From Vitrella brassicaformis CCMP3155 (Eukaryota; Protista; Chromerida), in contig CDMY01000391.1 in assembly GCA_001179505.1 (NCBI GenBank), positions 25,272-89,271 of the forward strand: a DNA stretch of 64,000 nucleotides. Direction: 5' to 3'. Below, in pieces: positions 19,237 through 60,281 of the stretch. Made by a program: the position numbers and the translations under genes. Under the pieces are notes generated by a model. That model saw only the letters and a program-made list of their open reading frames with translations, was not told where the DNA came from and did not search any database. Every line of letters starts with the position of its first letter. Position 1 is the stretch's first letter.

Positions 19237-22060
19237 TCAGTCGCCGCTCTCCTCCTCAGCTGAGGCATTGTCACCCGTCATGCAGACACACAGAGACCTG
19301 GATGTGATGCGGGTCGATGTGAGTCTATCTGTCGTCCGCTGTGTGCCTCTCCCCCTCGTGTGTACCTCCGCCGCCCTCTCCGTCGCTGTCGTCGTCCATA
19401 TCATCTCAACCGCCGCCATGGCCGTCGGAACCTACACCACACACACACACAGACAGAGAAGAAATGCCATCCATCCATCCACACTATGGCCACCATATGT
19501 GTGTCCCTCCCTCCCTCCCTCCCTCCCTCCCCCCCCTGTCCGCACTGTCATCATCGTCGCTGTCATCGTCCACTTGGCCGTTGAAGACGTATGGCGCCAC
19601 ATCTGACCCCAGCGCCACACGGGCCAGCTGAGTGGTCACCGGGAAGCGGTCCTTAAAGGCACCACTTACACACACAGGCGCCTCGGTCGTCACAATCCAA
19701 ACCCTCACTGCAGACAACCAGACAGAAATCACATGAAATTTGACCAGCGGAGCTGCCTGTCTGTCAGCCTGACCATTGTCGTTTCCATTATCCAGAATGA
19801 AAATCCATGCGACGAATGTGTGGCTTTCGTCGGTGATCACCAGGCATCGCACACGACCGTCCCGGCTGCTGAGTGTGGTGGTGCATCCGGCCACCGGTGA
19901 GTGGGGCGACTGGGTCAGGAGGCCATCAGACGGCCGCCACCAACACGCCTGAACCAACCACACACATACACACACACAATCACACACGCACCCCTCTCAC
20001 CCACTGGTGCCATTGATGTGTTACCTGTTGAGGAGTATTCCTGTGCGATTGATCTGGTGAGTCTTGAGGAAGTGGTTCATTACCATGCCCTTAGCGAAGG
20101 ACCACACCGAGGAATCGGTGCACGGGAGACCGTCCGACTCCCATGTGCCGATGGCGCCCAAGTAGTTGATGCGGCTCTCCACTGGGGGGTCATGCTCCAG
20201 TCGGTGCTGCTGATACAGATGGTGGGCAGCGAGGGGCGGGTCGACGGTCAGCCGGAAGCCGGGCTCGTCCTTGATGGCCCGCACCTCACCATTGGCACGG
20301 CGGAAGATCTGCAGGCAGCTGCGGTCACCGAAGTCGACGTGGCGGCCGGCCACCATGAGCTGCGCCAACACACGAGCTACCGACAGATACGCCTACACCA
20401 TACAGACAGACAGAGAGGGAATGCACGAGGCCTCTCCGGTCTCTCCCACCCCTCTGTGTGTGTGTGCATGTCTTACCGTCTTGCTGGCGTGTGTGCGAAT
20501 GTCATCTGCCATGAGGATGACAGGCAGTGTGCAGTAGCGGTACTGGCTGGCCCACTGCAGCACCTCCCTCGTCTCATCCCACCGCCCGCCCTCCTCGGCG
20601 ATCCACACCGCCGCCATGAGCTCACCCATCCCCAGCGATGGGTCGAACTGCACCAGCTGCAGCTGCTGAGTGTTGATGCCATCTCCGTCACGGCTCAGCG
20701 AGTGGTCGAGGCGGTTGCGCAGCTGGGCAGATGAGAAGGCTTTTCTGAAGCATGGTGCGGTGGCCCTCAGCTGAAGTGTGGTGCTGATGTCGGGGATGCA
20801 GCATCGGTCGTCGACGAAGAAATGGGCAAGGGGATGGTCCTTGTTGCTATCCTGCAGACGGCACACACACACGTCAAGGCACATCTGGCGCATTTCGGTC
20901 GGCTGTGTCACGCCCACCTGCTGCTGCTGCTGCTGCTGAGGGTGGTTGTGGACCGCGGGTTGCTCGGATGAGGGTCGTCGCCAACACCATGACCACACAC
21001 GGCAGCAGATGTGCCACATGAGCACCATCCACCACACAGACACCTACATAATGGGAACCATCGCAACACTCACTCTTCAAGTCAGTTGTGTCACACCCAC
21101 CTGCTGGTGCGGGTAGCTGTGCGTCGATGCGACGCTGTGGCGATCGGGCGAGGCGAACAACTCATCCACTGCATCCGTCACTAACTGGACGAAGGACACA
21201 AACGACACACAATGAAACCACCGCGTTGGTCATTCTGCTATTCTTATGACATGGTCACCCCTTTGGTGGTCTGTGTGTCGCGCCACAGCAGCCGCAGCAT
21301 CCTCAGGGTCGCTATGCCAGACTCCAACGCCGCCTCGCTAAACGAACTCTCAGCCACAAGGGCCGCACTCTGACGGACATTGACCCCCCCAGGCCATCAC
21401 ACACATCGTCGCACATCATGACACGTGGTGCTCCTTCGGCTGACCCAAATGCGGCCCGCTATCTGGTCCTGGTTGGCCTTGCGTGTGATGTAGACGGCCG
21501 TGGCGGCCAGCAGGCGGACATCGCACCCGGCCAAATCGACGTCACACATCGAGAGAAACTGTGGACAAACACACAAAAGGGCAAGGACAGACATGGATAA
21601 GCCATTCGATGGCTGGAGGTGTCTGTGTGTGGCTAACGGACCGGCTTACCATGAGGTATTTGGCGACTGAGAACAGGCGGCCGTGGGTGTCCATGCCGGC
21701 GGCAGTGAAGAGCCTCTCCAGACACTCCAGCCCGCAGTCAGATCTATCGGCCATCGCTCGGCCCACCAGCTGCACACACAGACAGCCGAACAAATGTCCG
21801 GTGTGCCTGTCTGTGTGTGTGACGTCAAAGCACCCGGGTGTATGTCGGCTGAATGGGCACATCAGCGACACTGACCAGCCGCACCGCCCGCATGACCGTC
21901 GTGTCGCCGCAGCCAATCCGTGACGCCCTCCCAACTAACTGGTTCACCCAGACGGCTGCACCACCAGACACACACACACACAGGAACACATCAGAAATGG
22001 ATTTGTGAATCGTTCGTGTGTCGTCCGGGTGGGCGGACCTCTCCGCTGCGGCCACTTCAT
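19237..22060 (-). CDS. Family member B: partially deleted cyclin-like N-terminus plus family core
   Basis: MKWPQRR|AVWVNQLVGRASRIGCGDTTVMRAVRL...AKYLM|FLSMCDVDLAGCDVRLLAATAVYITRK, then DHPLAHFFVDD...LQLRATAPCFRKAF and the shared core. Confidence 0.75.
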
Positions 22061-22895
22061 CTGCCGTCCTACCAGACAAACACACAGCATCACACCGACG
22101 TGCAGATCTGTCATTCCCGCCATCAGGTCGTCCCATTGGCCTCACCTTAAACACATTAGTCAACCAACCAACGATGCCCTCCGACATCGCCCCAGGCGTC
22201 TCACCGATGGATCCCAGCCATCAGGGCGCCTCGTGAAGGCCTCTGCTGTCCTCAAAAGAGGCCGGGGAGGCCCGGAACAGGCCACAGATCAATCCACACA
22301 AGGCTCGCCGAATCGAAGCCACGCAAACTGTCCTCAATCGCCGTGTGCAGATGCCGCTCTGCACACGCCGAATCGCCCGGTCCTACATCCGAACGATCTT
22401 CGCCCGAAAACGATAAACTTCAGGGTTCGAAGGGTCAAAGGGTTTCATACCCTACAGCCTCCCGGACAGTCTGTGCGTTGCGAGCGTGACGCACTCGGCC
22501 GAGAATGGGTCACTCGAGTCATCCTCTCGCTTGCTGCGGTGAGATGGTGGCCCATTGAGCTTACAGACATCGGAGGTGAGGGAGGCCGACCACTCACTGA
22601 CAGTTCACTGACTCACTGATGCACTCACTGATCCATTGGCCTCAATGCGGTCGCCGTCCTTTTCTGTTGGCATCTCTCCCTGTGTGTCTGTCGGCCCATC
22701 GCTGCAGGTTTGTCGTTGAGGAGTGACGGCGGCCTCCTCATCTGCCGCTGCTGGTGCTGGTGCTGCTAGTGGTGCATTCAGTTCTCTGCATGCTCATCTG
22801 TCCATCTGTTCATCGAACGAGGTGAGCAGCACACAGATCAATGAGCAGCATGCTTGATGCACACGATCCTCTGTCGGCTCTGTCGCTCTGTGCAG

Positions 22896-24007: not shown

Positions 24008-25773
24008 TAGCCGCTGCGCCACACCATGCCGCTCCCACGATGCCGTACTACGCGCACCCGAAGATGGCGAGTAGGGTGGACCCCAGGCAGGGACTACTTT
24101 CCGCGGCGACGGCTGCAGCACTGTGGGGCCAACAGCACCCACACCATCAGTACCACCAGCAGCGACAGCACGAGCAGCTTGGTGGGATGAAGATGCAGGA
24201 ACCGCACCATCAGCAGCATCAGCAGCATCCCTTCTCATACATCTTCGTTGGTCGCCGCACCTTCTACCTCCTCAGCCTCACAGACATCCTGCGGCTGAGG
24301 GCCACCTGCACGTGGCTCAGGTGTCTCTTCCGAGCGCCCCAGCTGAGAGTTCGGCTCCGCCACTCTGTCGGCTCACAGGCGGGGCTGCGGCGGCTGGTCA
24401 ATGGACAGCAGGTGCAGCTGGTGCGGTTCGACGACGACCACTTCGGCGTGTGTGATCTGCTGGCGGCTGTGTGTGTGATGGAGGAGGGGGACTGGATGGA
24501 GATGGGCGAGGTGATTGAGCTGGCGGGGCAGTGCGGCCACTGTGACCTGCCCGTCATCCTCACAGCCGATGACATTCGCACACACGCCAGCAAGACGGTA
24601 AGGCACACACAGAGGGGCGGGAGAGAACAGAGAGGCCTCATCCCCTCTCTGTCTGTCTGTCTGTGGTGTGGTGTAGGCGTATAGATCGGTAGCTCGTGTG
24701 TTGGCGCAGCTGATGGTGGTCGGCCGCCACGTGGCCTTCGGTGACGGCAGCTGCCTGCAGATCTTCCGCCATGGCAATGGTGAGGTGCGGGCCATCAGGG
24801 ACGAGCCCTTCTTCCGGCTGCAGGTCAACCCGCCCCTCCCCGCCCACCATCTCTATCAGCAGCATCGACAGCCACACGACCCACCAGTGAACGGCGGCTT
24901 CATCTACTCGGACGGATGGGGGCCGACCGGTCTCCCGTACACCGATGCGTCGGTGTCGTCGTTTGCTAAGGACATGGTCCTCAACCACTTCAGCGAGACT
25001 CACCAGACCAATCGCACATCGAGTGACCTTGACAGGTAACACACTCCAATGGCACCAGTGGGTGAGAGGGGTGCGTGTTTGATTGTGTGTGTGTGTGTGT
25101 GTGGTTGGTTCAGGCGTGTTGGTGGCGGCCGTCTGGATGGCCTCCTCACACAATCGCCCCACACACCGGTGGCCGGATGCACCACCACACTCAGCTACGA
25201 CGGTGATTTCCGATGGCTGGTGCTCACCGCCGGCAGCCACAACTTCGTCGCATGGATTTCCATCACCGGATTAGTAAACAACGATGGGAAGGGAGACAGA
25301 GAGGCAGCTCTGCTGGTTAAGTGTCGCGTTCTCTTCTTCCCCTTGTGTGCAGTGGGTGTGCGTGTCGAGACCACTGAGGCGCCTGTGTGTGCGAGTGGTC
25401 CCTTCAAAGACCGCTTCCCTCTCACCACTCAGCTGGCCCGTGTGGCGCTGGGAGCGGTGGCGCCATACGTCTTCGACGGACAAGTACAGCAGCAGCAGCA
25501 GCAGCAGGATGACGACAACGGTACGGACACACACATGGATGGATGGATGGATGGATGACGTGCCTTCCCTCTCTGTGTGTGTGGTCTGCAGATTCCGAGG
25601 ATGGTGCTGATGAGGGTGATACGAATGACGGCAGCGGAGAAGGCGACGGAGGTACACAGCCACACGCACCACAGAGGACCTCACATTGGCCTGAATGACT
25701 TTCATTTGTGTGTGTGTGTCCTGTGCACTCGACAGGCGAGGGTGGCGTAGCTGAGGCGGAGAGCGGCAACTGA
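24004..25773 (+). CDS. Family member C, with a Gln/His-rich N-terminus
   Basis: HPFSYIFVGRRTFYLLSLTDILRLRATCTWLRCLF (F-box-like), then the shared core and acidic tail exons. Confidence 0.8.
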
Positions 25774-52730: not shown

Positions 52731-54764
52731 CTACCCCTCCGCCCCCTCCTCCCCACTGTCACCCTCCAGCTGGCCGTCCACCTCCCCCTCGCTACCGCCA
52801 TCGCTGTCACAACCGCTGCCGATATCATCATCCGGCCCGACATTCGTCTCAACCTCGGCTGTTTGCGCCACATGCTGCTGATAGAGGGCCGCCACACGCT
52901 GTTCGTCGATGCTGTCCGGAATATGGCGGCCGAGAAACACGATCGCCTGAATGAATGACAACAGACGACCCAGAGACAGTTTGGTGTGTGTTCGCGCCCC
53001 TAGGTCGACATAAGGGAGTGCCTTGCAGGTCGGTCACCGGAGCTGCGATGTGAATGTCATTATGTGTCTGCAGCTCGACCAGCTTGTCCACACCGCCGGC
53101 CTGCGTGAAACGGAATAGAGAACAGCCGTGTGAATGGTGTCCACTGTCCTCATTCTCTCTCTCTCTCTCTCATCCACTGACCTGCTCTACTAGAGTGGAG
53201 TAGGGGCTTTCGGGGAGGCCCTCGAGGGCCTGCTTCTGACGACCCGCACTGATGCACACACCAGACGAACGCAACACAGCACGTGATAGGTAAATGCGGT
53301 GTGTGTCCTTTGGCCTTCCCCTGCTACCGTAGTATCTTCTCCAGCACGGAGATGATGATCCCTGGATGGTGATCACTCGATTGTCATTGGCGTTACCATC
53401 GAGTGCGTCACAGATGGGCTGGACGCCGCCACACTCAACCACATACTCAACCTGCACGATTGAACGAGGAATGAACACACACACAGACAGGCCCGTGATT
53501 GTGGGGCGGTTCAGCGGTCAGCGTAGGCACCTGTTGCTGCGAACCTCCACGGGCTATACTGCCGATGCTCGCTGCTGCTATCTCCCTCTTGCGAGGATCG
53601 CTGCCCCCCCTGGCCGCCGCGTTGACCAGCAGCGGCACCAAATCGGCATCGATGACCGTCTGCACGTGGGCAGTGGTGCCTGCATCAAATCCATATATTA
53701 CACACACAAACACGGCCCCCCACACTTGACGTCCACGGAATCAGTGAGTGTGTGTGATGGTATGTCTTACCTTCAGCGATGCAGTGCACCATCATACATG
53801 CGATGCATTTCCCAACGTCATCGGCCACCTCCAGCAGCGCCGTGAGCGATCCCACGGCGCCACACTCGACCAACGCGTCACGGTCGGCATCGGTACCTGA
53901 GAACGCGGGCAGGAAGGACAAAGCCGACCATGCAGCTCAGAACGGTCTCTCAGGCACTCATGTATACTGACCGTCTTCCCCAACACACAAACTCGCGAAG
54001 TGCGCCACGGCTCGTCGTGCGGGCTGCAGCACACGGTCATTCTGCTGAGGTGCGCCGATCAGGTTGACCAGGACCGGCAGGAAGGGGGCGAACTCGGCCA
54101 GGGGGGCGGGGAGGGGTCGGTCGCACCACAGGTTGCCCAGCAGGTGGGCACCCATGGCGAGCACGTCGGCCTTGGTGCTCTCGCGCATCGCCGTCAGCAG
54201 CGGCTGCAGGACGCCGGCCGCCACCACGGCATTGCGACAGGCCACCGATCCCTCCGTGGTCTTGAACAGCGCAGCAATCGCCATTACACGCACATTGTCA
54301 TGAGGTGACGACACGAGCTGCACGAGAGGCGGGACGGCACCGGCATCCACCACCACCACCGCATCGCCATGACGCACCGCCAGCTCGCTTAGGGCAACTG
54401 CTGCAAATTTCTGCGCCTCCTCGCAGCCGCTCAGCTGCTCGACCAGCGCAGGCAGCGCGCCCGCACTGATGGCCTTCTGCTCCATGACATCTACGTGCTT
54501 GACGGACAGCAGCAGGAACAGCAGCCGCACGGCGTCAGCCCGAAGTCGTGGTTGGTCCTGGTGCTGTGGACCGCCGGCAGAGGCCATCACTTGGCAGAGA
54601 TCGTTCATGACGGCAGTGATCTCGGCCTCGATGGCCTCGAAGCCCCGCTGCTGGACGGCTTCGTCGTATGCCTCTTGCGTGTGGATGGCATTGTACAGCT
54701 TTGTCGCCTTGACCAACACCGCTTGGGGCGGTGGATGGCCAGATGTGCTGTCCGCCGACTCCAT
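52731..54764 (-). CDS. Second, highly divergent importin-alpha-like ARM protein
   Basis: VDAGAVPPLVQLVSSPHDNVR, CRNAVVAAGVLQPLL, AGTTAHVQTVIDADLVP, GSQQQ|VEYVVECGGVQPICD and AGGVDKLVELQTH, ending in an acidic tail. 5' end uncertain. Confidence 0.8.
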
Positions 54765-55410
54765 CTCGTCACACTGCGAAGACCCACACCCACACACACA
54801 TGGTGCAGAATAGTCCGTGCCTGCTCTGCTTGATCCATCTGACCTTGAGGTGCTCAGCGGTCCTCTGTTTTGCTGCTGAATGGTCCCGCTGCCGCCCTGC
54901 TGTCTGTCCGGCGCAGATGTCACAACTCACACCTGGAGAAGAAATGACAGCACGAAATGAGATAGATCAGGGCTGCCCGAAGATTCCCTCTGGACCCTTG
55001 CTCATCACTGCTAACTCACCGACAGAGATCTCCTCCACAGCCCGAGAGATGGACGCAGCCCGACAGCAGGCAGGCACTCAACGCTAAAAGAGAACACAGC
55101 ACGCCTCTGCAGAAGTCTGGCGGCTCACGGGAAGGGCACCTCCATCGCCGGCATCCAGAGTTTCTCATCTCTTCCAGCTCGCACTGCCTCGATCGTTCCT
55201 GGCAGCCTGTTTCAGCGATTGTGGTGCCTTCCAGAGGGCAGCAGGAGCCCTATCAGACACAAACTGATGGTTGGAACTCATCGCTGAGGCCCATCGCAGG
55301 GCATCATGGCGGCTGTCACGGTGAGAGAGGGAATGATGATGGAATGATGACTGATCAATTAAGAGGTGCTCTGTGTTCTGTGTGGTTGGTCTGACAAACA
55401 GGTCGGTAGC

Positions 55411-58106
55411 ATGAAATGGCCGCAGCAGAGAGGTTCGCCCGACTCGCACACACCAACACACAACAGATGCCCTCAGAGGTGTGCTGTGCTGTCTGTGATG
55501 TGTTGCAGCCGTGTTGGTGGACGGGATCGTCAAGAGAGCAGCGTCGATGGGCTGCCGCGACGCGACCGTCATGCGGGCGGTGCGGCTGCTGGACCTGTGC
55601 CATACCGATGGAATCATCGACACGGACAACGCCACACAGGCAAAGAGATCTGAATGACAGACAGAGAGTAAGGACTCGTGGGATGTGTGTGTCACTTGGC
55701 TGGCTGCTGACACGCAGGTAGCAGTTGCGTGTGTGGCCGCCTGCGTCAAGCGGCTGGAGCCACACCTGCTGATGGACGACATGCCTGATGACCCTTCCCA
55801 CACACGGGCACAGGTATTGAAACACAGACACAGACACGCACACGACGCTCACCTGTGCAGCGCCGACCTGTTTGTCTGTCTGTTTGTTTGTTTGGCTCTG
55901 TGTGTGCAGGTGGTGGGTCGTGCGGCGGCTGATAGTTCTGTGTGCGGCATTGGGTGTCTGGAGAAGCTGTTCACTGATGCCGGCATGGACACCCACGGCC
56001 GCCTGTTCTCAGTCGCCAAATACCTCATGGTAAGCCGGTCGGCCACTCAGACACAGACACCTGCAGCCGTCGAATGGCTTATCCATGTCTGTCTGTGCCC
56101 TTTGTGTGTCCACAGTTTCTGTCGATGTGTGAAGTCGAGTTGGCCGGGTGCGATGTCCGTCTGCTGGCCGCCACGGCCGTCTACATCACACGCAAGAACC
56201 ACCAGGACCAAATAAGGGGCCGCATATGGGTGGGCCAGAGCGGCACGTGTCATGATGTGTGTATGTGTGATGGCCTGGGTGGGTCAATGTCCGTCAGAGT
56301 GCGGCCCTTGTGGCTGAGAGTTCGGTTAGCGAGGCGGCGTTGGAGTCTGCCATAGCGACGCTGAGGATGCAGCGGCTGCTGTGGCGCGACACACAGACCA
56401 CCAAAGGGGTGAGGGACACACCAGCACACAATGTGCGTGTCACTGTGTGTCCTTTGTGTGTAATTGTGTGTGCAGATAGTCACGGATGCAGTGGACGAGA
56501 TGTTCGCCTCGGCCGACCGCCACGGCGTTGCGTTGACACACAGCCACCCGCAGCAAGAGCGCCAGCAGCAGGTGGGTGTGACACAGCCGACCGACCGAAA
56601 TGCGCCAGATGTGCCTTGACGTGTGTGTGCCGTCTGCAGGATGGCAACAAGGACCATCCCCTCGCCCATTTCTTTGTCGACGACCGGTGCTGCATCCCCG
56701 ACATCAGCACCACGCTCCAGCTGAGGGCAGCCGCACCATGCTTCAGAAAAGCCTTCTCACCAACGCAGCTACGCAACCGCCTCCACCACTCGATAGCCCG
56801 TGAAGGCATCGACACTCAGCTGGTGCAGTTCGACACATCGCTGGGAATGGGTGAGCTGATGGCGGCGGTGTGGATCGCCGAGGAGGGCGGGCGGTGGGCT
56901 GAGACGAGGGAGGTGCTGCAGTGGGCCAGCCAGTGCCGCTACTGTACACTGCCCATCATGCTCACGGCAGATGACATCAACACACACGCCAGCAAGACGG
57001 TAAGGCACACACAGAGGGGCGGGAGAGAACAGAGAGGCCTCATCCCCTCTCTGTCTGTCTGTCTGTCTGTCTGTGGTGTGGTGTAGGCGTATGGATTGTT
57101 AGCTCGTGTGTTGGCGCAGCTCATGGTGGTCGGCCGCCACGTGGCCTTCGGTGACGGCAGCTGCCTGCAGATCTTCCGCCATGCCAATGGTGAGGTGCGG
57201 GCCATCAAGGACGAGCCCGGCTTTCGGCTGACCGTCAACCCGGTCATCCCCGCCCACCAGCTGTATCAGCAGCATCGCCTACAGCATGACCCACCAGTGG
57301 AAAGCCGCATCGAATACTGGGCCATCGACGGCAGATGGGTGTCGAGCTTCCCGTTCGAATATCCGTCGGTGTCGTCGTTTGCCAAGGACATGATCCTCAG
57401 CCACTTCGCCTTCACTCACCAGATCAATCGCACATCGATACGACTCAACAGGTAACACATCAATGGCACCAGTGGCGAGAGGGGTGCGTGTTCGATTGTG
57501 TGTGTGTGTGTGGTTCAGGTATGTCGGTGGCGGCCGCCTGGATGGCCTCCTCACCCAATCGCCCCACACACAGGTGGCCGGATGCACAACGACATACAGC
57601 TGGGACGGTCGTGTGCTAGACCTGGTGCTCACCGATAGCAGCCACAACTTCGTCGCATGGATTCCCCTTGAGGATATGGGAAACGACAATGGTCAGCCCG
57701 ACAGACAGACAGCTCTGCTCGTCAAATGTTATTAGTGTTATCTGTCATTGTCCACAGTGTTGGTTAGTGTCGAGACCAGTGAGGCGGCCGTATGTGGGAG
57801 TGGTGCCTTCAAGGACCGCTACCCCGTCACCATTCAGCTAGCGCGTGTGGCGCTGGGGCGAGTGGCGCCATACGTCTTCGACGGCCAAGTAGAATGATGA
57901 TGACGGTAGGGACACGCACAAACACAGGCCGGATGGACGGCACGACGTGGCTTGTGTTGTGTGTGGTTGTGTGTTTGTGTGTCGTGTTAGGTTCCGACGA
58001 TGGCAGCGATGATGAGGGCAGTGCAGGTACCAAAGAGAGAGGGAGGGAAGGCACACAGCACACAAGTGTGTCCCTCCTTGTGCACTCGACAGGTGACGGT
58101 GTCTGA
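55411..58106 (+). CDS. Family member D: degenerate cyclin fold plus F-box-like motif plus family core
   Basis: MKWPQQR|AVLVDGIVKRAASMGCRDATVMRAVRLLD...Q|VAVACVAACVK...AKYLM|FLSMCEVELAGCDVRLLAATAVYITRK is spliced in phase through helical linker exons to DGNKDHPLAHFFVDD and the core. Confidence 0.78.
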
Positions 58107-58693
58107 TTGAGCAGTCAACTACCACTGGTACGCCACAGAAATGCCACGCGCGAAGCCGATGAATGTCTTCGGTCATCCAATTGCGTTGTGTGTGCACAGG
58201 CCGAATGGTGGTCGGTGTACCACTCACTCACTCTGGATCTTGGATGGTCAGGGGTTACCATATGCCTCTGATGCCGTCACGTCAGTTAGGCTATGGCTTT
58301 GCTTTTTGTCCGTGCGTCTCTCCCTCCCCCTCTATGTGTGTGTGTCTGTCTGTGTGAATAGAGATCTTCTCGTCCTCATGGCTGGCTGGCTGGCTGGCTG
58401 GCTGTGGGTGGGTGGGCCTGTGGGTGCGCTGAGTGCTCTTCACTGCTGCAGTGGCCGATTTTGATGTGATGCTGCGGGGTGTGTGAGTGTGTTTGGCTGC
58501 CTGGTCGGGCCACTCGCAACCAATCAATGCATGTGTGTGTGCTGATGGAGACCTCTCTCTCAATGATTGTGCGCCTGAGTGTCCAACACTGTCCCACACC
58601 CCCAGAACGTGGGTCCAGGATTTCAAACCCTCCTCCCCCTCCCTCCCCTTCAGTAGATCTTCCTCCGCCGGCGTGGCTCTTCATCTTCTGCAG

Positions 58694-60281
58694 ATGCAGC
58701 AACAGCAACATCAGGAGCAACAGCATCCCTTCGCGTACATCTTCCTCGGCCGCCTCACGTGGTATCTTCTCAGCATCGTCGACGTCGTGCAGCTCAGAGC
58801 CACCTGCACATGGCTCAGGGGTCTCTTCGGAGCGCCCCAGCTGAGAGATCGGCTCCGCCACTCTGTCGGCTCACAGGCGGGGCCGCGGCGGGCGGTGAAT
58901 GGGCAGCAGGTGCAGCTGCTGCGGTTCGACGACGACCAGTTCGGCGTGCGGGATCTGCTGGCGGCTGTGTGTGTGATGGAGGAGGGGAGCTGGGTGGAGA
59001 TCGGTGTGGTCATTGAGCTGGCGGGGCAGTGCGGCTACTGTGAGCTGCCTGTCATCCTCACATCCGATGACATCAACACACACGCCAACAAAACGGTGAG
59101 CCAGCAAACAGAGGGGCGGGGAGGGGACAGTGAGGCCTCATTCCCTCTCTCCCTGTGTGTGTGTAGGCGTATATGTCGGCTCCGCGTGTGTTTGCACAGC
59201 TCATGGTGGTTGGCCGCCACGTCAAGTTCAGTGACAACAGCTGCCTGCAGATCTTCCGCCATGCCAATGGTGAGGTGCGGGCTATCAAGGACGAGCCCGG
59301 GTTCCAGCTGGACATCGACCCGCCCCTCCTCGTCGGCCATCTGTATCAGCGGAACCGACTAGAGCATGACCCGCCAGTGCGCAGCGGCATCAACTACAAT
59401 GGCGGCAGATGGGTGTCGAGCTTCATCCCGTTCGAGTATCCGTCGATGTCATCGTTTGCCAAGCGTGTGATCCTCCGCCACTTCCCTCAGACTCACCAGA
59501 TCAATAGCACATTGACTACACTCCACAGGTACCAACCACATCTACGGCACCAATGGGCGAGAGCGGTGCGTGTCTGATTGTGTGTGTGTGTGTGTGTTTG
59601 GTTGGTTTAGGCGTGTTGGTGGCGGCCGTCTGGATGGCCTCCTCACCCAGTCGCCCCACACACCGGTGGCCGGATGCACCATCACATTCAGCCGGGACGG
59701 TCGTGTGCGATGGCTGGTGCTCACCAACAGCAGCCACACCTTCGTGGCATGGATTCTCATTGAGGATCAGACCGATAATGGTCAGGCCGACAGACAGGCA
59801 GCTCTGGTCGTGATCGAATGCCATGTGATGGTCTCTCTGTCATTGTCTGCAGCGTGGGTTGACGTCGTGACGACCGAGGTGCCCCTGGCGGGTGTCAGTG
59901 AGAATGCGCCTTTCAAGGACCGCTTCCTCGTCACCACTCAGCTGGCCCGTGTGGCGTTGGGGGCGGTGGCGCCATACGTCTTCGACGGACAAGTACAGCA
60001 GCAGCAACAGGATGACGATAGCGACGATGGTATGCACACACACACATTGGTGGACGGATGGACGATGTTCCTTCACTTCTGTGTGGTGCAGACGGCCATG
60101 GTGGTGGCTGGGATGATATGGACGACGACAGCGAGGGCGAGGACAGCGGAGGTACGCAGCCACACACAGCACACGCATACCCGCACGTCGGCCTGCGTCA
60201 CATTCAGGTGTGTGTGTGTGTGTGTGTCCTGTGCACTCGACAGGTGAGGATGCCGCAGCTGAGGAGGAGAGCGGCGACTGA
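58694..60281 (+). CDS. Family member E, tandem to D, with a Gln-rich N-terminus (closest to C)
   Basis: HPFAYIFLGRLTWYLLSIVDVVQLRATCTWLRGLF, shared core and acidic tail ...GEDAAAEEESGD*. Confidence 0.8.

What the first reader, a model, noticed from the sequence alone, without database searches (positions are those of the whole stretch)
55411..56660. Degenerate cyclin fold fused upstream of an F-box-like motif in a lineage-specific family
Seen after splicing: QRAVLVDGIV...TVMRAVRLLD...QVAVACVAACVK matches the cyclin box pattern (MRAILVDWL...TL.LAV.LLD...QLVAVACL.IA.K), but the MRAIL/W substrate-patch residues are altered. AKYLMFLSM...LLAATAVYITRK matches cyclin C-terminal helices. It runs in phase into HPLAHFFVDD...LQLRAAAPCFRKAF and the family core. 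Established: cyclin F has F-box then cyclin. Inference: this is the reverse order, a cyclin-derived substrate or CDK-binding module grafted onto an expanded adaptor family.
Basis: partly seen in the sequence, partly recalled or inferred. Interest (0 to 1): 0.75.

Follow-up and report, generated by a model that had tools for sequence, protein, structure and literature searches.

The report
Divergent cyclin fused to Vitrella-only family
This expressed gene of the alga Vitrella brassicaformis joins a very divergent cyclin to a member of a large Vitrella-only protein family that may begin with a worn F-box, so it resembles animal cyclin F with the parts in reverse order; no binding partner has been shown.

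Summary
Window 55306-57897 (+) is a 12-exon gene of Vitrella brassicaformis CCMP3155, public protein CEM09038.1 / A0A0G4F9T8, which UniRef already names "Cyclin C-terminal domain-containing protein".

- **Cyclin part.** Residues 1-238 are a divergent double cyclin box. Pfam Cyclin_C passes its curated cut-off. Cyclin_N falls just short but lies in the right order before it. ESM Atlas features and its model point to B-like cyclins.
- **Fusion.** RNA-like contigs splice the last cyclin exon to the family-core exon (56571|56640), so the fusion is transcribed.
- **Copies.** At least 13 Vitrella gene models carry the module, and at least 11 of them run on into the core.
- **Selection.** The C-terminal cyclin lobe is the most constrained part (dN/dS 0.42). 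The N-terminal, CDK-facing lobe is eroding (0.69), and four copies have deletions in it.
- **Core.** It folds confidently (pLDDT 86) but matches no known fold. All ten family members I looked up are from Vitrella.
- **F-box.** Support is weak. Seven of 29 family motif segments give sub-threshold F-box-like hits to the second half of the profile only. This gene's own motif gives none.

The scan already followed up a paralogue on other DNA (s1-221691) with the same reading. Verdict: a real, new variant of a known kind. The cyclin-F-like function is unproven.

The parts
55306..55320 (+). Exon 0 with the probable start codon (5 residues)
   Evidence: In frame with the next exon, with an upstream in-frame stop. 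Same N-terminus in public protein P0052. A paralogue's transcript contig covers 55226-55319 and continues into exon 1 (X1 record 3).
55402..55432 (+).
   Evidence: Joint 55432|55509 seen in X7 and X1. Splice sites checked.
55509..55639 (+). Exon 1: N-terminal cyclin box helices 1-2 (QRAVLVDG..., ...MRAVRLLD)
   Evidence: Pfam Cyclin_N: residues 10-73 match profile positions 27-89 of 127, at 16.6-19.8 bits against a cut-off of 23, E 6.5e-4.
55640..55717 (+). GC-AG intron between cyclin helices 2 and 3
   Evidence: Donor reads GCAAAG. Reading on in frame meets a stop. The junction is used in P0052 and in a paralogue transcript (table 5c, X1 55601-55711).
55718..55813 (+). Exon 3: N-terminal cyclin box helix 3 (...VAACVKRLE) and an acidic loop
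   Evidence: End of the Cyclin_N match. Missing from in-window paralogue B and from P0051, P0056 and P0060.
55910..56571 (+). Exons 4-7 (55910-56029, 56116-56229, 56298-56408, 56476-56571): end of the N-lobe, the whole C-terminal cyclin box, and a Gln-rich linker
   Evidence: Pfam Cyclin_C: residues 113-226 match profile 11-115 of 119, at 27.3-30.4 bits against a cut-off of 22. Nearly invariant among 12 paralogues. dN/dS 0.42. Joints 56029|56116 and 56408|56476.
56572..56639 (+). Intron joining the cyclin module to the family core, in phase 0
   Evidence: Joint 56571|56640 in X7 (72 nt on the shorter side) and in X1 (record 4: 56475-56567 plus 56636-855, no mismatches).
56646..56807 (+). F-box-like motif of the family (residues 241-294, HPLAHFF...LQLRAAAPCFRKAF...QLRNRL)
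   Evidence: This copy gives no Pfam hit. Seven of 29 family homologues of this segment hit PF12937 below its cut-off. The paralogue model shows three short helices here at pLDDT 63-79.
56640..57897 (+). Exons 8-11 (56640-56999, 57087-57451, 57519-57691, 57758-57897): conserved family core, ending at stop TGA 57895
   Evidence: 45 representatives in 1.84 billion proteins, and all ten looked up are from Vitrella. The paralogue core folds at pLDDT 85.9 and pTM 0.83 with no clear PDB or Atlas match. Joint 57451|57519.
19571..22187 (-). In-window paralogue B (public protein P0054): same cyclin-plus-core layout, but without about 49 residues of the N-terminal cyclin box
   Evidence: tblastn of the exons, sequence reading, alignment A1.
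53958..54923 (-). Head-to-head upstream neighbour, an armadillo-repeat gene (large exon)
   Evidence: Pfam Arm 58 bits. An Arm / Arm_3 gene sits in the same position in 4 of the 6 paralogue loci fetched.

Best explanation
This is one transcribed gene of Vitrella brassicaformis, and it has two parts.

Part 1 is a highly divergent A/B-like cyclin with two cyclin-box lobes. Part 2 is a member of a Vitrella-only expanded family. That family's conserved core starts with a short three-helix motif resembling the second half of an F-box, followed by about 300 residues of an alpha/beta domain with no known relative.

The fusion arose once. It was then amplified to at least 13 gene copies, often together with a head-to-head armadillo-repeat neighbour.

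Inferred mechanism: the cyclin module no longer works as a classical CDK activator. Its CDK-facing N-lobe is eroding, while its C-lobe is kept. It therefore most likely serves as a protein-binding module on a family that acts as an interaction adaptor.

If the worn F-box still binds Skp1, the protein would be an SCF substrate receptor analogous to cyclin F, with the domain order reversed.

Shown here: the architecture, transcription of the junction, the copy number, and the pattern of constraint. Inferred only: any partner, Skp1 binding, and loss of CDK activation.
For: - **Cyclin identity.** Cyclin_C passes its cut-off in P0052, P0002 and five further paralogues scanned, and is precomputed for 11 of the 12 fused models. 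Cyclin_N falls just below its cut-off and lies directly before it in order. 29 of the 30 nearest ESM Atlas clusters are cyclins (score 0.93). The Atlas model of residues 2-229 aligns to a 'B-like cyclin' cluster at TM 0.78. The cyclin-fold proteins Brf1, TFIIB and Ctk2 rank 1, 3 and 5 when my poor AF2 model is aligned by VIA-align; cyclins T1 and C and the Rb pocket come lower in the list; all at Z 4.8-6.6, which is not significant alone.
- **Fusion and expression.** Spliced contigs cover 56571|56640 and four other joints. The public model P0052 has the same junctions. Paralogue fragments occur in the MMETSP transcriptome.
- **Copy number.** 12 fused public models. A further fused copy is split into two gene models. 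DNA contig depth is raised over the region.
- **Constraint.** Pooled dN/dS over 6 copies is 0.69 for the N-lobe, 0.42 for the C-lobe and 0.48-0.65 for the core. Four copies lack 45-50 residues of the N-lobe.
- **Patch residue.** The Met of the MRxIL patch, which cyclin F needs to bind substrates (PMC8670743), is Gln or Arg in every copy that keeps this segment.
- **F-box-like motif.** PF12937 is the only Pfam family that recurs over the motif, in 7 of 29 segments with best E 0.0082.
Against: - No F-box family reaches its Pfam cut-off, and this gene's own motif gives no hit at all.
- The hits cover only profile positions 15-45, not the N-terminal part that carries the LPxE signature.
- The motif profile finds no F-box protein among PDB sequences. 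Fold searches of the core find none either, although so small a domain is barely tested that way.
- My AF2 model of the cyclin part is poor (pLDDT 47), and Foldseek found no cyclin with it.
- Pairwise and paralogue-profile searches find no true cyclin.
- By my manual alignment, the Lys of the ASK-type motif (K70) and a Glu in helix 5 (E109), which contact CDK in cyclin A, seem to be kept in this copy. CDK binding is therefore not excluded.
- dN/dS of 0.4-0.7 is only moderate constraint, and the 15 pairs compared are not independent.
Confidence: 0.55

Rival explanations
1. The family core is not an F-box protein at all. It would be an unrelated Vitrella-specific domain, perhaps ligand-binding since its last 110 residues faintly resemble helix-grip / SRPBCC folds. 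The cyclin module would then be a regulatory or localising add-on with no link to ubiquitin ligases.
For: - No F-box hit above cut-off, and none in this copy.
- Weak Foldseek matches (E 0.01-0.08) to Bet v 1 / PYL / SRPBCC proteins over model residues about 245-360.
- An Atlas match to Polyketide_cyc2 at TM 0.46 by the target.
- Other family members carry unrelated N-termini such as CBM_20.
Against: - PF12937 is the only Pfam family that recurs over the motif, and always in the same register.
- The motif sits where an F-box usually sits, directly before a large C-terminal domain.
- The helix-grip matches have low TM (about 0.3) and Z of at most 5.7, which is at background level.
Confidence: 0.27
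2. The cyclin module is still a working CDK partner. The fusion would tether an active CDK/CRK to the family domain, so that the kinase phosphorylates whatever that domain binds.
For: - Both cyclin lobes are present in this copy.
- The Lys of the ASK-type motif lies at the end of the Cyclin_N match (residue 70), and a helix-5 Glu appears retained by manual alignment.
- One paralogue locus has a CKS gene immediately downstream.
- An earlier scan note reports a natural CDK-cyclin fusion in this genome (s1-231056, not tested here).
Against: - The N-lobe, which engages the CDK C-helix (PMC6170502), is the least constrained part (dN/dS 0.69).
- The N-lobe is partly deleted in four copies.
- K70 is Glu in several paralogues.
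- Cyclin_N is below its cut-off or absent in every copy tested.
Confidence: 0.12
3. The copies are young duplicates drifting towards pseudogenes. They are transcribed, but the cyclin part has no specific function.
For: - Introns of the two in-window copies are 64-90% identical, so the duplication is recent.
- Copies carry deletions, truncations and a lost acidic tail.
- dN/dS reaches 0.9-1.1 for the N-lobe in some pairs.
Against: - C-lobe dN/dS is 0.35-0.58 in all 15 pairs.
- The C-lobe is nearly invariant in protein sequence.
- Reading frames are open across 12 exons in most copies.
- Spliced transcripts exist.
Confidence: 0.06

Closest known systems
Cyclin F (CCNF / FBXO1) of animals, the substrate receptor of SCF(cyclin F)
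   Same: One polypeptide combines a cyclin domain with an F-box-type motif. In cyclin F the cyclin domain recruits substrates rather than activating a CDK, using its hydrophobic patch (PMC8670743).
   Different: - The order is reversed: the cyclin comes first.
- The F-box is unverified, and undetectable in this copy.
- The patch Met that cyclin F needs is Gln here.
- An extra domain of about 300 residues with unknown fold follows.
- It occurs only in Vitrella, in a dozen or more copies.
- No sequence search here found any relative outside Vitrella, so the combination is probably independent of cyclin F; no tree was built.
A/B-type mitotic cyclins (Pfam Cyclin_N plus Cyclin_C)
   Same: Two tandem cyclin-box folds. 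Cyclin_C is above its cut-off. The nearest ESM Atlas structural cluster is 'B-like cyclin'.
   Different: - The N-lobe is below its Pfam cut-off and eroding.
- There is no N-terminal regulatory region; the protein starts about 10 residues before helix 1.
- The module is fused to another domain.
- No pairwise similarity to any cyclin is detectable.
Lineage-specific expanded F-box families of plants and nematodes
   Same: Large, fast-evolving, tandemly duplicated families. Each has a short N-terminal motif and a variable partner domain, and evolves by birth and death (PMC3719486, PMC8665587, listed).
   Different: Those families have F-boxes that Pfam recognises and known C-terminal domains. Here the motif is sub-threshold and the C-terminal domain has no known fold.
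Paralogous Vitrella cyclin-plus-family fusions (P0002, P0046-P0056; earlier scan report s1-221691)
   Same: Same architecture, at 64-81% identity in the cyclin part.
   Different: This copy keeps the full N-lobe. It has lost the acidic C-terminal tail through an early stop at 57895.

Membership tests
Cyclin (cyclin-box fold proteins) | C-terminal cyclin box recognised by Pfam Cyclin_C above the curated cut-off | tested here: met
   P0052 scores 27.3-30.4 bits against a cut-off of 22, with residues 113-226 matching profile 11-115 of 119. Paralogues score 32-36 bits.
Cyclin (cyclin-box fold proteins) | N-terminal cyclin box recognised by Pfam Cyclin_N above the curated cut-off | tested here: not met
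   Best score is 19.8 bits in P0052 and 21.8 in P0050, against a cut-off of 23. The match covers only profile 27-89 of 127. Two of six copies give no hit. The match does lie in the right order, directly upstream of Cyclin_C.
Cyclin (cyclin-box fold proteins) | Predicted or solved structure with one or two five-helix cyclin-box folds | tested here: inconclusive
   - The ESM Atlas model, itself low-confidence, aligns at TM 0.78 to a B-like cyclin cluster over residues 2-229.
- My AF2 model has pLDDT 47 and about 11 helices.
- Foldseek found no cyclin with it.
- VIA-align top hits are cyclin-fold proteins, but at Z of only 6.6 or less.
Cyclin (cyclin-box fold proteins) | Binds and activates a cyclin-dependent kinase | not testable with these tools
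   Indirect evidence only: the N-lobe is the least constrained part and is deleted in four copies.
F-box proteins (SCF substrate receptors) | F-box domain recognised by a Pfam F-box model above its cut-off | tested here: not met
   - This gene gives no hit.
- Across the family, 7 of 29 motif segments hit PF12937 at 13-16.3 bits against a cut-off of 24.3.
- Only 1 of 49 longer family sequences hits, at E 0.22.
F-box proteins (SCF substrate receptors) | N-terminal LPxE(I/L)L part of the box (helix 1), which by general knowledge contacts Skp1 | tested here: inconclusive
   Profile matches start only at position 15 of 47. A conserved His-Pro followed by hydrophobic residues lies at roughly the right distance, and three distant members start with LPAEP or IPAEP.
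F-box proteins (SCF substrate receptors) | Binding to Skp1 | not testable with these tools
Cyclin F-type proteins | Intact MRxIL hydrophobic patch used for substrate (Cy motif) binding | tested here: not met
   The motif reads QRAVL and is followed by Gly where cyclins have Trp. The Met is Gln or Arg in every paralogue that keeps this segment. The requirement for Met and Leu in cyclin F is from PMC8670743.

The most novel reading that the evidence does not exclude
Vitrella independently built its own 'cyclin F': an SCF substrate receptor in which a cyclin C-lobe, rather than the classical hydrophobic patch, recruits cell-cycle proteins such as CDK/CKS complexes. It then amplified this receptor to a dozen diverging copies, giving an expanding and possibly stage-specific set of degradation adaptors in a free-living relative of apicomplexan parasites.
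Probability: 0.2. Interest if true: 0.7.

Novelty: new variant of a known kind. Interest (0 to 1): 0.45.

Why it matters
Outside animals I know of no described protein that joins a true cyclin fold to an F-box, and my three full-text searches, none aimed at that question, turned up none. An independent, reversed-order version in a chromerid alga would be a case of convergent domain pairing. It would also give a handle on how cyclins are reused as plain binding modules once they stop activating kinases.

The copies form a natural deletion series: the N-lobe is present, eroded or deleted, while the C-lobe is always kept. That series points to which half carries the retained function.

The family core, confidently folded but matching no known structure, is a candidate new domain.

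The practical value is modest until a partner (Skp1, a CDK, CKS or a substrate) is shown.

Tried and rejected
- **Exon-by-exon searches.** Pfam on ten exons and PDB sequence searches on two cyclin exons gave nothing. The exons are too short, so this says little.
- **phmmer and a paralogue profile of the cyclin part against PDB sequences** found no cyclin. The profile is built from very similar paralogues only.
- **Word-indexed search with the cyclin alignment** found only Vitrella copies, so I could not obtain a true cyclin for a profile-profile comparison or to trace the donor cyclin.
- **AF2 of the cyclin part with 12 paralogues** gave pLDDT 47. Foldseek with that model was meaningless.
- **Searches on the core** found no convincing relative: profile against PDB sequences, Foldseek PDB, VIA-align wide, Atlas by shape and Atlas by features.
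- **Motif profile against PDB sequences** found no F-box protein.
- **'Separate genes joined by a wrong gene model'** is rejected because of the spliced contigs.
- **Downstream joints as a new gene start.** I considered that 57905|57991 and the joints after it start the next gene. They more likely mark the former acidic-tail exons of this gene, now behind its stop codon.
Full report
**What is there.** The window is eukaryotic DNA of about 58% G+C with many short introns. Reading the three forward frames gives a 12-exon model from ATG 55306 to stop 57895. Eleven introns of 67-96 nt separate the exons. All are GT-AG except 55640-55717, which is GC-AG. My model has 583 residues.

**Public record.** A search with the largest core exon found only 45 representatives among 1.84 billion proteins. 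A word search seeded from one of them returned 12 full-length relatives. All are named as Vitrella brassicaformis CCMP3155, and UniRef of them 'Cyclin C-terminal domain-containing protein'.

One relative, P0052 (CEM09038.1, A0A0G4F9T8, 587 residues), is this gene's own public model. It is identical to my exon model through residue 358. After that it skips 11 conserved residues at the exon 8/9 junction, and at the 3' end it reads past the stop by using another donor.

I used P0052, a sequence returned by a tool, wherever a joined protein was needed. My own joined 583-residue model was neither searched nor folded.

**Transcription.** In one search, two of the four runs laid on 54500-58500 (X2, X3) give unspliced contigs and behave as genomic DNA. 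The other two (X7, X1) give contigs that skip exactly the predicted introns, so they behave as RNA.

- Joints seen: 55432|55509, 56029|56116, 56408|56476, 56571|56640 and 57451|57519.
- The key joint between the last cyclin exon and the first core exon is carried by X1 record 4 without a mismatch, and by X7 with 72 nt on the shorter side.
- A contig about 95% identical, from a close paralogue, links the region around 55306 through exon 1 to exon 3. This supports both the upstream start and the GC-AG intron.
- No single contig spans the whole gene, so a full-length transcript is not shown.

**Is it a cyclin?**

- Exon by exon, nothing is detectable.
- On P0052, Pfam Cyclin_C matches residues 113-226 (profile 11-115 of 119) at 27-30 bits against a cut-off of 22.
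- Cyclin_N matches residues 10-73 (profile 27-89 of 127) at 17-20 bits against a cut-off of 23, directly upstream and in the right order.
- Paralogues give Cyclin_C at 32-36 bits. Cyclin_N scores 12-22 bits in four of six copies tested and is absent in two.
- In the ESM Atlas, 29 of the 30 nearest clusters by language-model features are cyclins (score 0.93, 171-173 shared features). The Atlas's own model of residues 2-229 aligns to a 'B-like cyclin' cluster at TM 0.78 over 214 residues.
- My AF2 run on 12 close paralogues failed (pLDDT 47), and Foldseek with that model found no cyclin.
- VIA-align on the same model ranked Brf1, TFIIB and the cyclin Ctk2 at positions 1, 3 and 5. Cyclins T1 and C and the Rb pocket come further down, all at Z 4.8-6.6. 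The enrichment is suggestive, but the scores are not significant.
- Pairwise and paralogue-profile searches find no true cyclin.

I conclude that the module is a real but extremely divergent double cyclin box. The C-lobe is secure. The N-lobe is probable.

**State of the cyclin module.**

- The hydrophobic-patch motif reads QRAVL followed by Gly where cyclins have Trp. The Met is Gln or Arg in every paralogue that keeps this segment.
- In cyclin F this Met and Leu are required for substrate binding (PMC8670743).
- Alignment A1 shows the region from residue 117 onward is almost invariant, while the N-lobe varies.
- P0051, P0056, P0060 and the in-window paralogue P0054 (22187-19571, minus strand) lack 45-50 residues running from the end of helix 2 to helix 4.
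- Codon comparison of six copies (this gene, paralogue B and loci L001-L004) gives pooled dN/dS of 0.69 for the N-lobe, 0.48 for exon 4, 0.42 for the C-lobe, 0.48 for core exon 8 and 0.65 for core exons 9-11. The C-lobe is below 0.6 in all 15 pairs. The pairs are not independent and the duplicates are young, with introns 64-90% identical.

The N-lobe is the part that engages the CDK C-helix (PMC6170502). This pattern therefore argues against a classical CDK-activating role and for a function retained in the C-lobe. Against that, my manual alignment suggests that this particular copy keeps the Lys of the ASK-type motif and a helix-5 Glu. CDK binding is not excluded.

**The family core and the F-box question.** The core gives no Pfam hit in P0052. 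AF2 on paralogue P0002 residues 160-550, with 49 family sequences, gives a confident model (pLDDT 85.9, pTM 0.83). It has three short helices over the motif, a mixed alpha/beta middle, and a C-terminal sheet packed against a long helix.

No search found a convincing relative:

- Foldseek against the PDB has its best hit at E 0.011, to helix-grip (Bet v 1 / PYL) proteins over the last 110 residues, with TM about 0.3.
- VIA-align wide has a best Z of 5.7.
- Atlas by shape has TM of 0.31 or less by the query.
- The family profile against PDB sequences finds nothing.

For the motif itself:

- Only 1 of 49 longer family sequences touches an F-box model, at E 0.22.
- When the 50-58-residue motif segments are scanned alone, 7 of 29 hit PF12937 F-box-like. 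It is the only family that recurs. Scores in the members re-scanned one by one are 13-16 bits against a cut-off of 24.3, always over profile positions 15-45 of 47.
- The segment from this gene gives no hit.
- A profile of the motif finds no F-box protein among PDB sequences.

The motif is therefore F-box-like in its second half in part of the family. It is degenerate in the cyclin-bearing subfamily. Skp1 binding is untested.

**Origin and spread.** The window holds five family members. Two carry the cyclin module (this gene and paralogue B). Three are core-only, at 17308-16069 (minus strand), 24229-25474 and 58727-59983.

- Other family members carry different N-termini, for example CBM_20.
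- All ten members I looked up are from the Vitrella genome or its MMETSP transcriptome.
- One further fused copy is split into two public gene models (L006).
- One copy has cyclin exons 1-7 but no core within 3.8 kb downstream (L005).
- An armadillo-repeat gene lies head-to-head upstream in the window (Arm 58 bits) and in four of six paralogue loci. The duplicated unit therefore often includes both genes.

**Comparison with what is known.** The nearest functional analogue is animal cyclin F, which has an F-box followed by a cyclin domain. Its cyclin domain binds substrates through its hydrophobic patch. Here the order is reversed, the patch is altered, the F-box is unproven and a large unknown domain follows.

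As a family member, the protein passes only the Cyclin_C test. It fails the Cyclin_N and F-box cut-offs.

Full-text searches pairing Vitrella with 'cyclin' and with 'F-box' did not surface a description of these proteins in the top-listed papers.

Within this scan, an earlier follow-up on a paralogue on other DNA (s1-221691) reached the same reading and noted that no full-length transcript was shown. The present work adds the spliced junction, the pattern of constraint and deletions, the confident core model without a known fold, and the register of the F-box-like hits.

**Verdict.** This is a new variant of a known kind: a cyclin domain recruited into a probable adaptor protein. Interest is moderate and depends on whether Skp1 or a CDK partner can be shown.

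Noticed in passing
window 53958-54923 (-); L001 1-1448, L003 1-787, L004 1-1083, L006 1199-3756: An armadillo-repeat gene (Arm, Arm_3, faint ARMC5-like) lies head-to-head upstream of the cyclin-fusion gene in the window and in four of six paralogue loci. The pair seems to duplicate as a unit and may share a promoter region.
   Followed up: partly
L003 5323-5833: Directly downstream of paralogue P0050 lies a small gene whose product hits Pfam CKS, the cyclin-dependent kinase regulatory subunit. This was seen at one locus only, so it may be coincidence.
   Followed up: no
window 57889-58200: This copy ends at TGA 57895, where paralogues continue into a long acidic tail. The local sequence looks frame-shifted relative to paralogue B. 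RNA-like contigs still splice three downstream introns (57905|57991, 58026|58091, 58127|58200), which now lie behind the stop. The public model P0052 avoids the stop by using another donor, which the listed joints do not show.
   Followed up: partly
window 55640-55717: A GC-AG intron, with donor GCAAAG, lies inside the cyclin N-lobe. The public model uses it and a paralogue transcript supports it.
   Followed up: yes
window 56999-57120; L006 4001-6487; L005 4001-5015: The public gene models of this family are uneven. P0052 skips 11 conserved residues at the exon 8/9 junction. One fused gene is split into two models (P0059 and a 361-residue model). P0058 and P0059 read into the intron after exon 6.
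   Followed up: partly
window 21100-20852 (-): In paralogue B, the intron before the core exon carries an insertion that repeats the donor-side sequence (a Gln-codon run followed by GTGGG). The public model P0054 translates this as an extra hydrophobic segment.
   Followed up: no
L005 4101-5157: One genomic copy has cyclin exons 1-7 but no family core within 3.8 kb downstream, and no assembly gap there. It may be a truncated duplicate or a stand-alone form.
   Followed up: partly
P0062 / P0063 (MMETSP and JGI records): A Vitrella transcript fragment joins a cyclin C-lobe exon directly to an acidic tail, without the core. It may be an alternative form or come from another paralogue.
   Followed up: no
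window 17308-16069 (-), 24229-25474 (+), 58727-59983 (+): Three further members of the family core lie in the same 64 kb. tblastn with this gene's cyclin exons found no cyclin exons beside them.
   Followed up: partly
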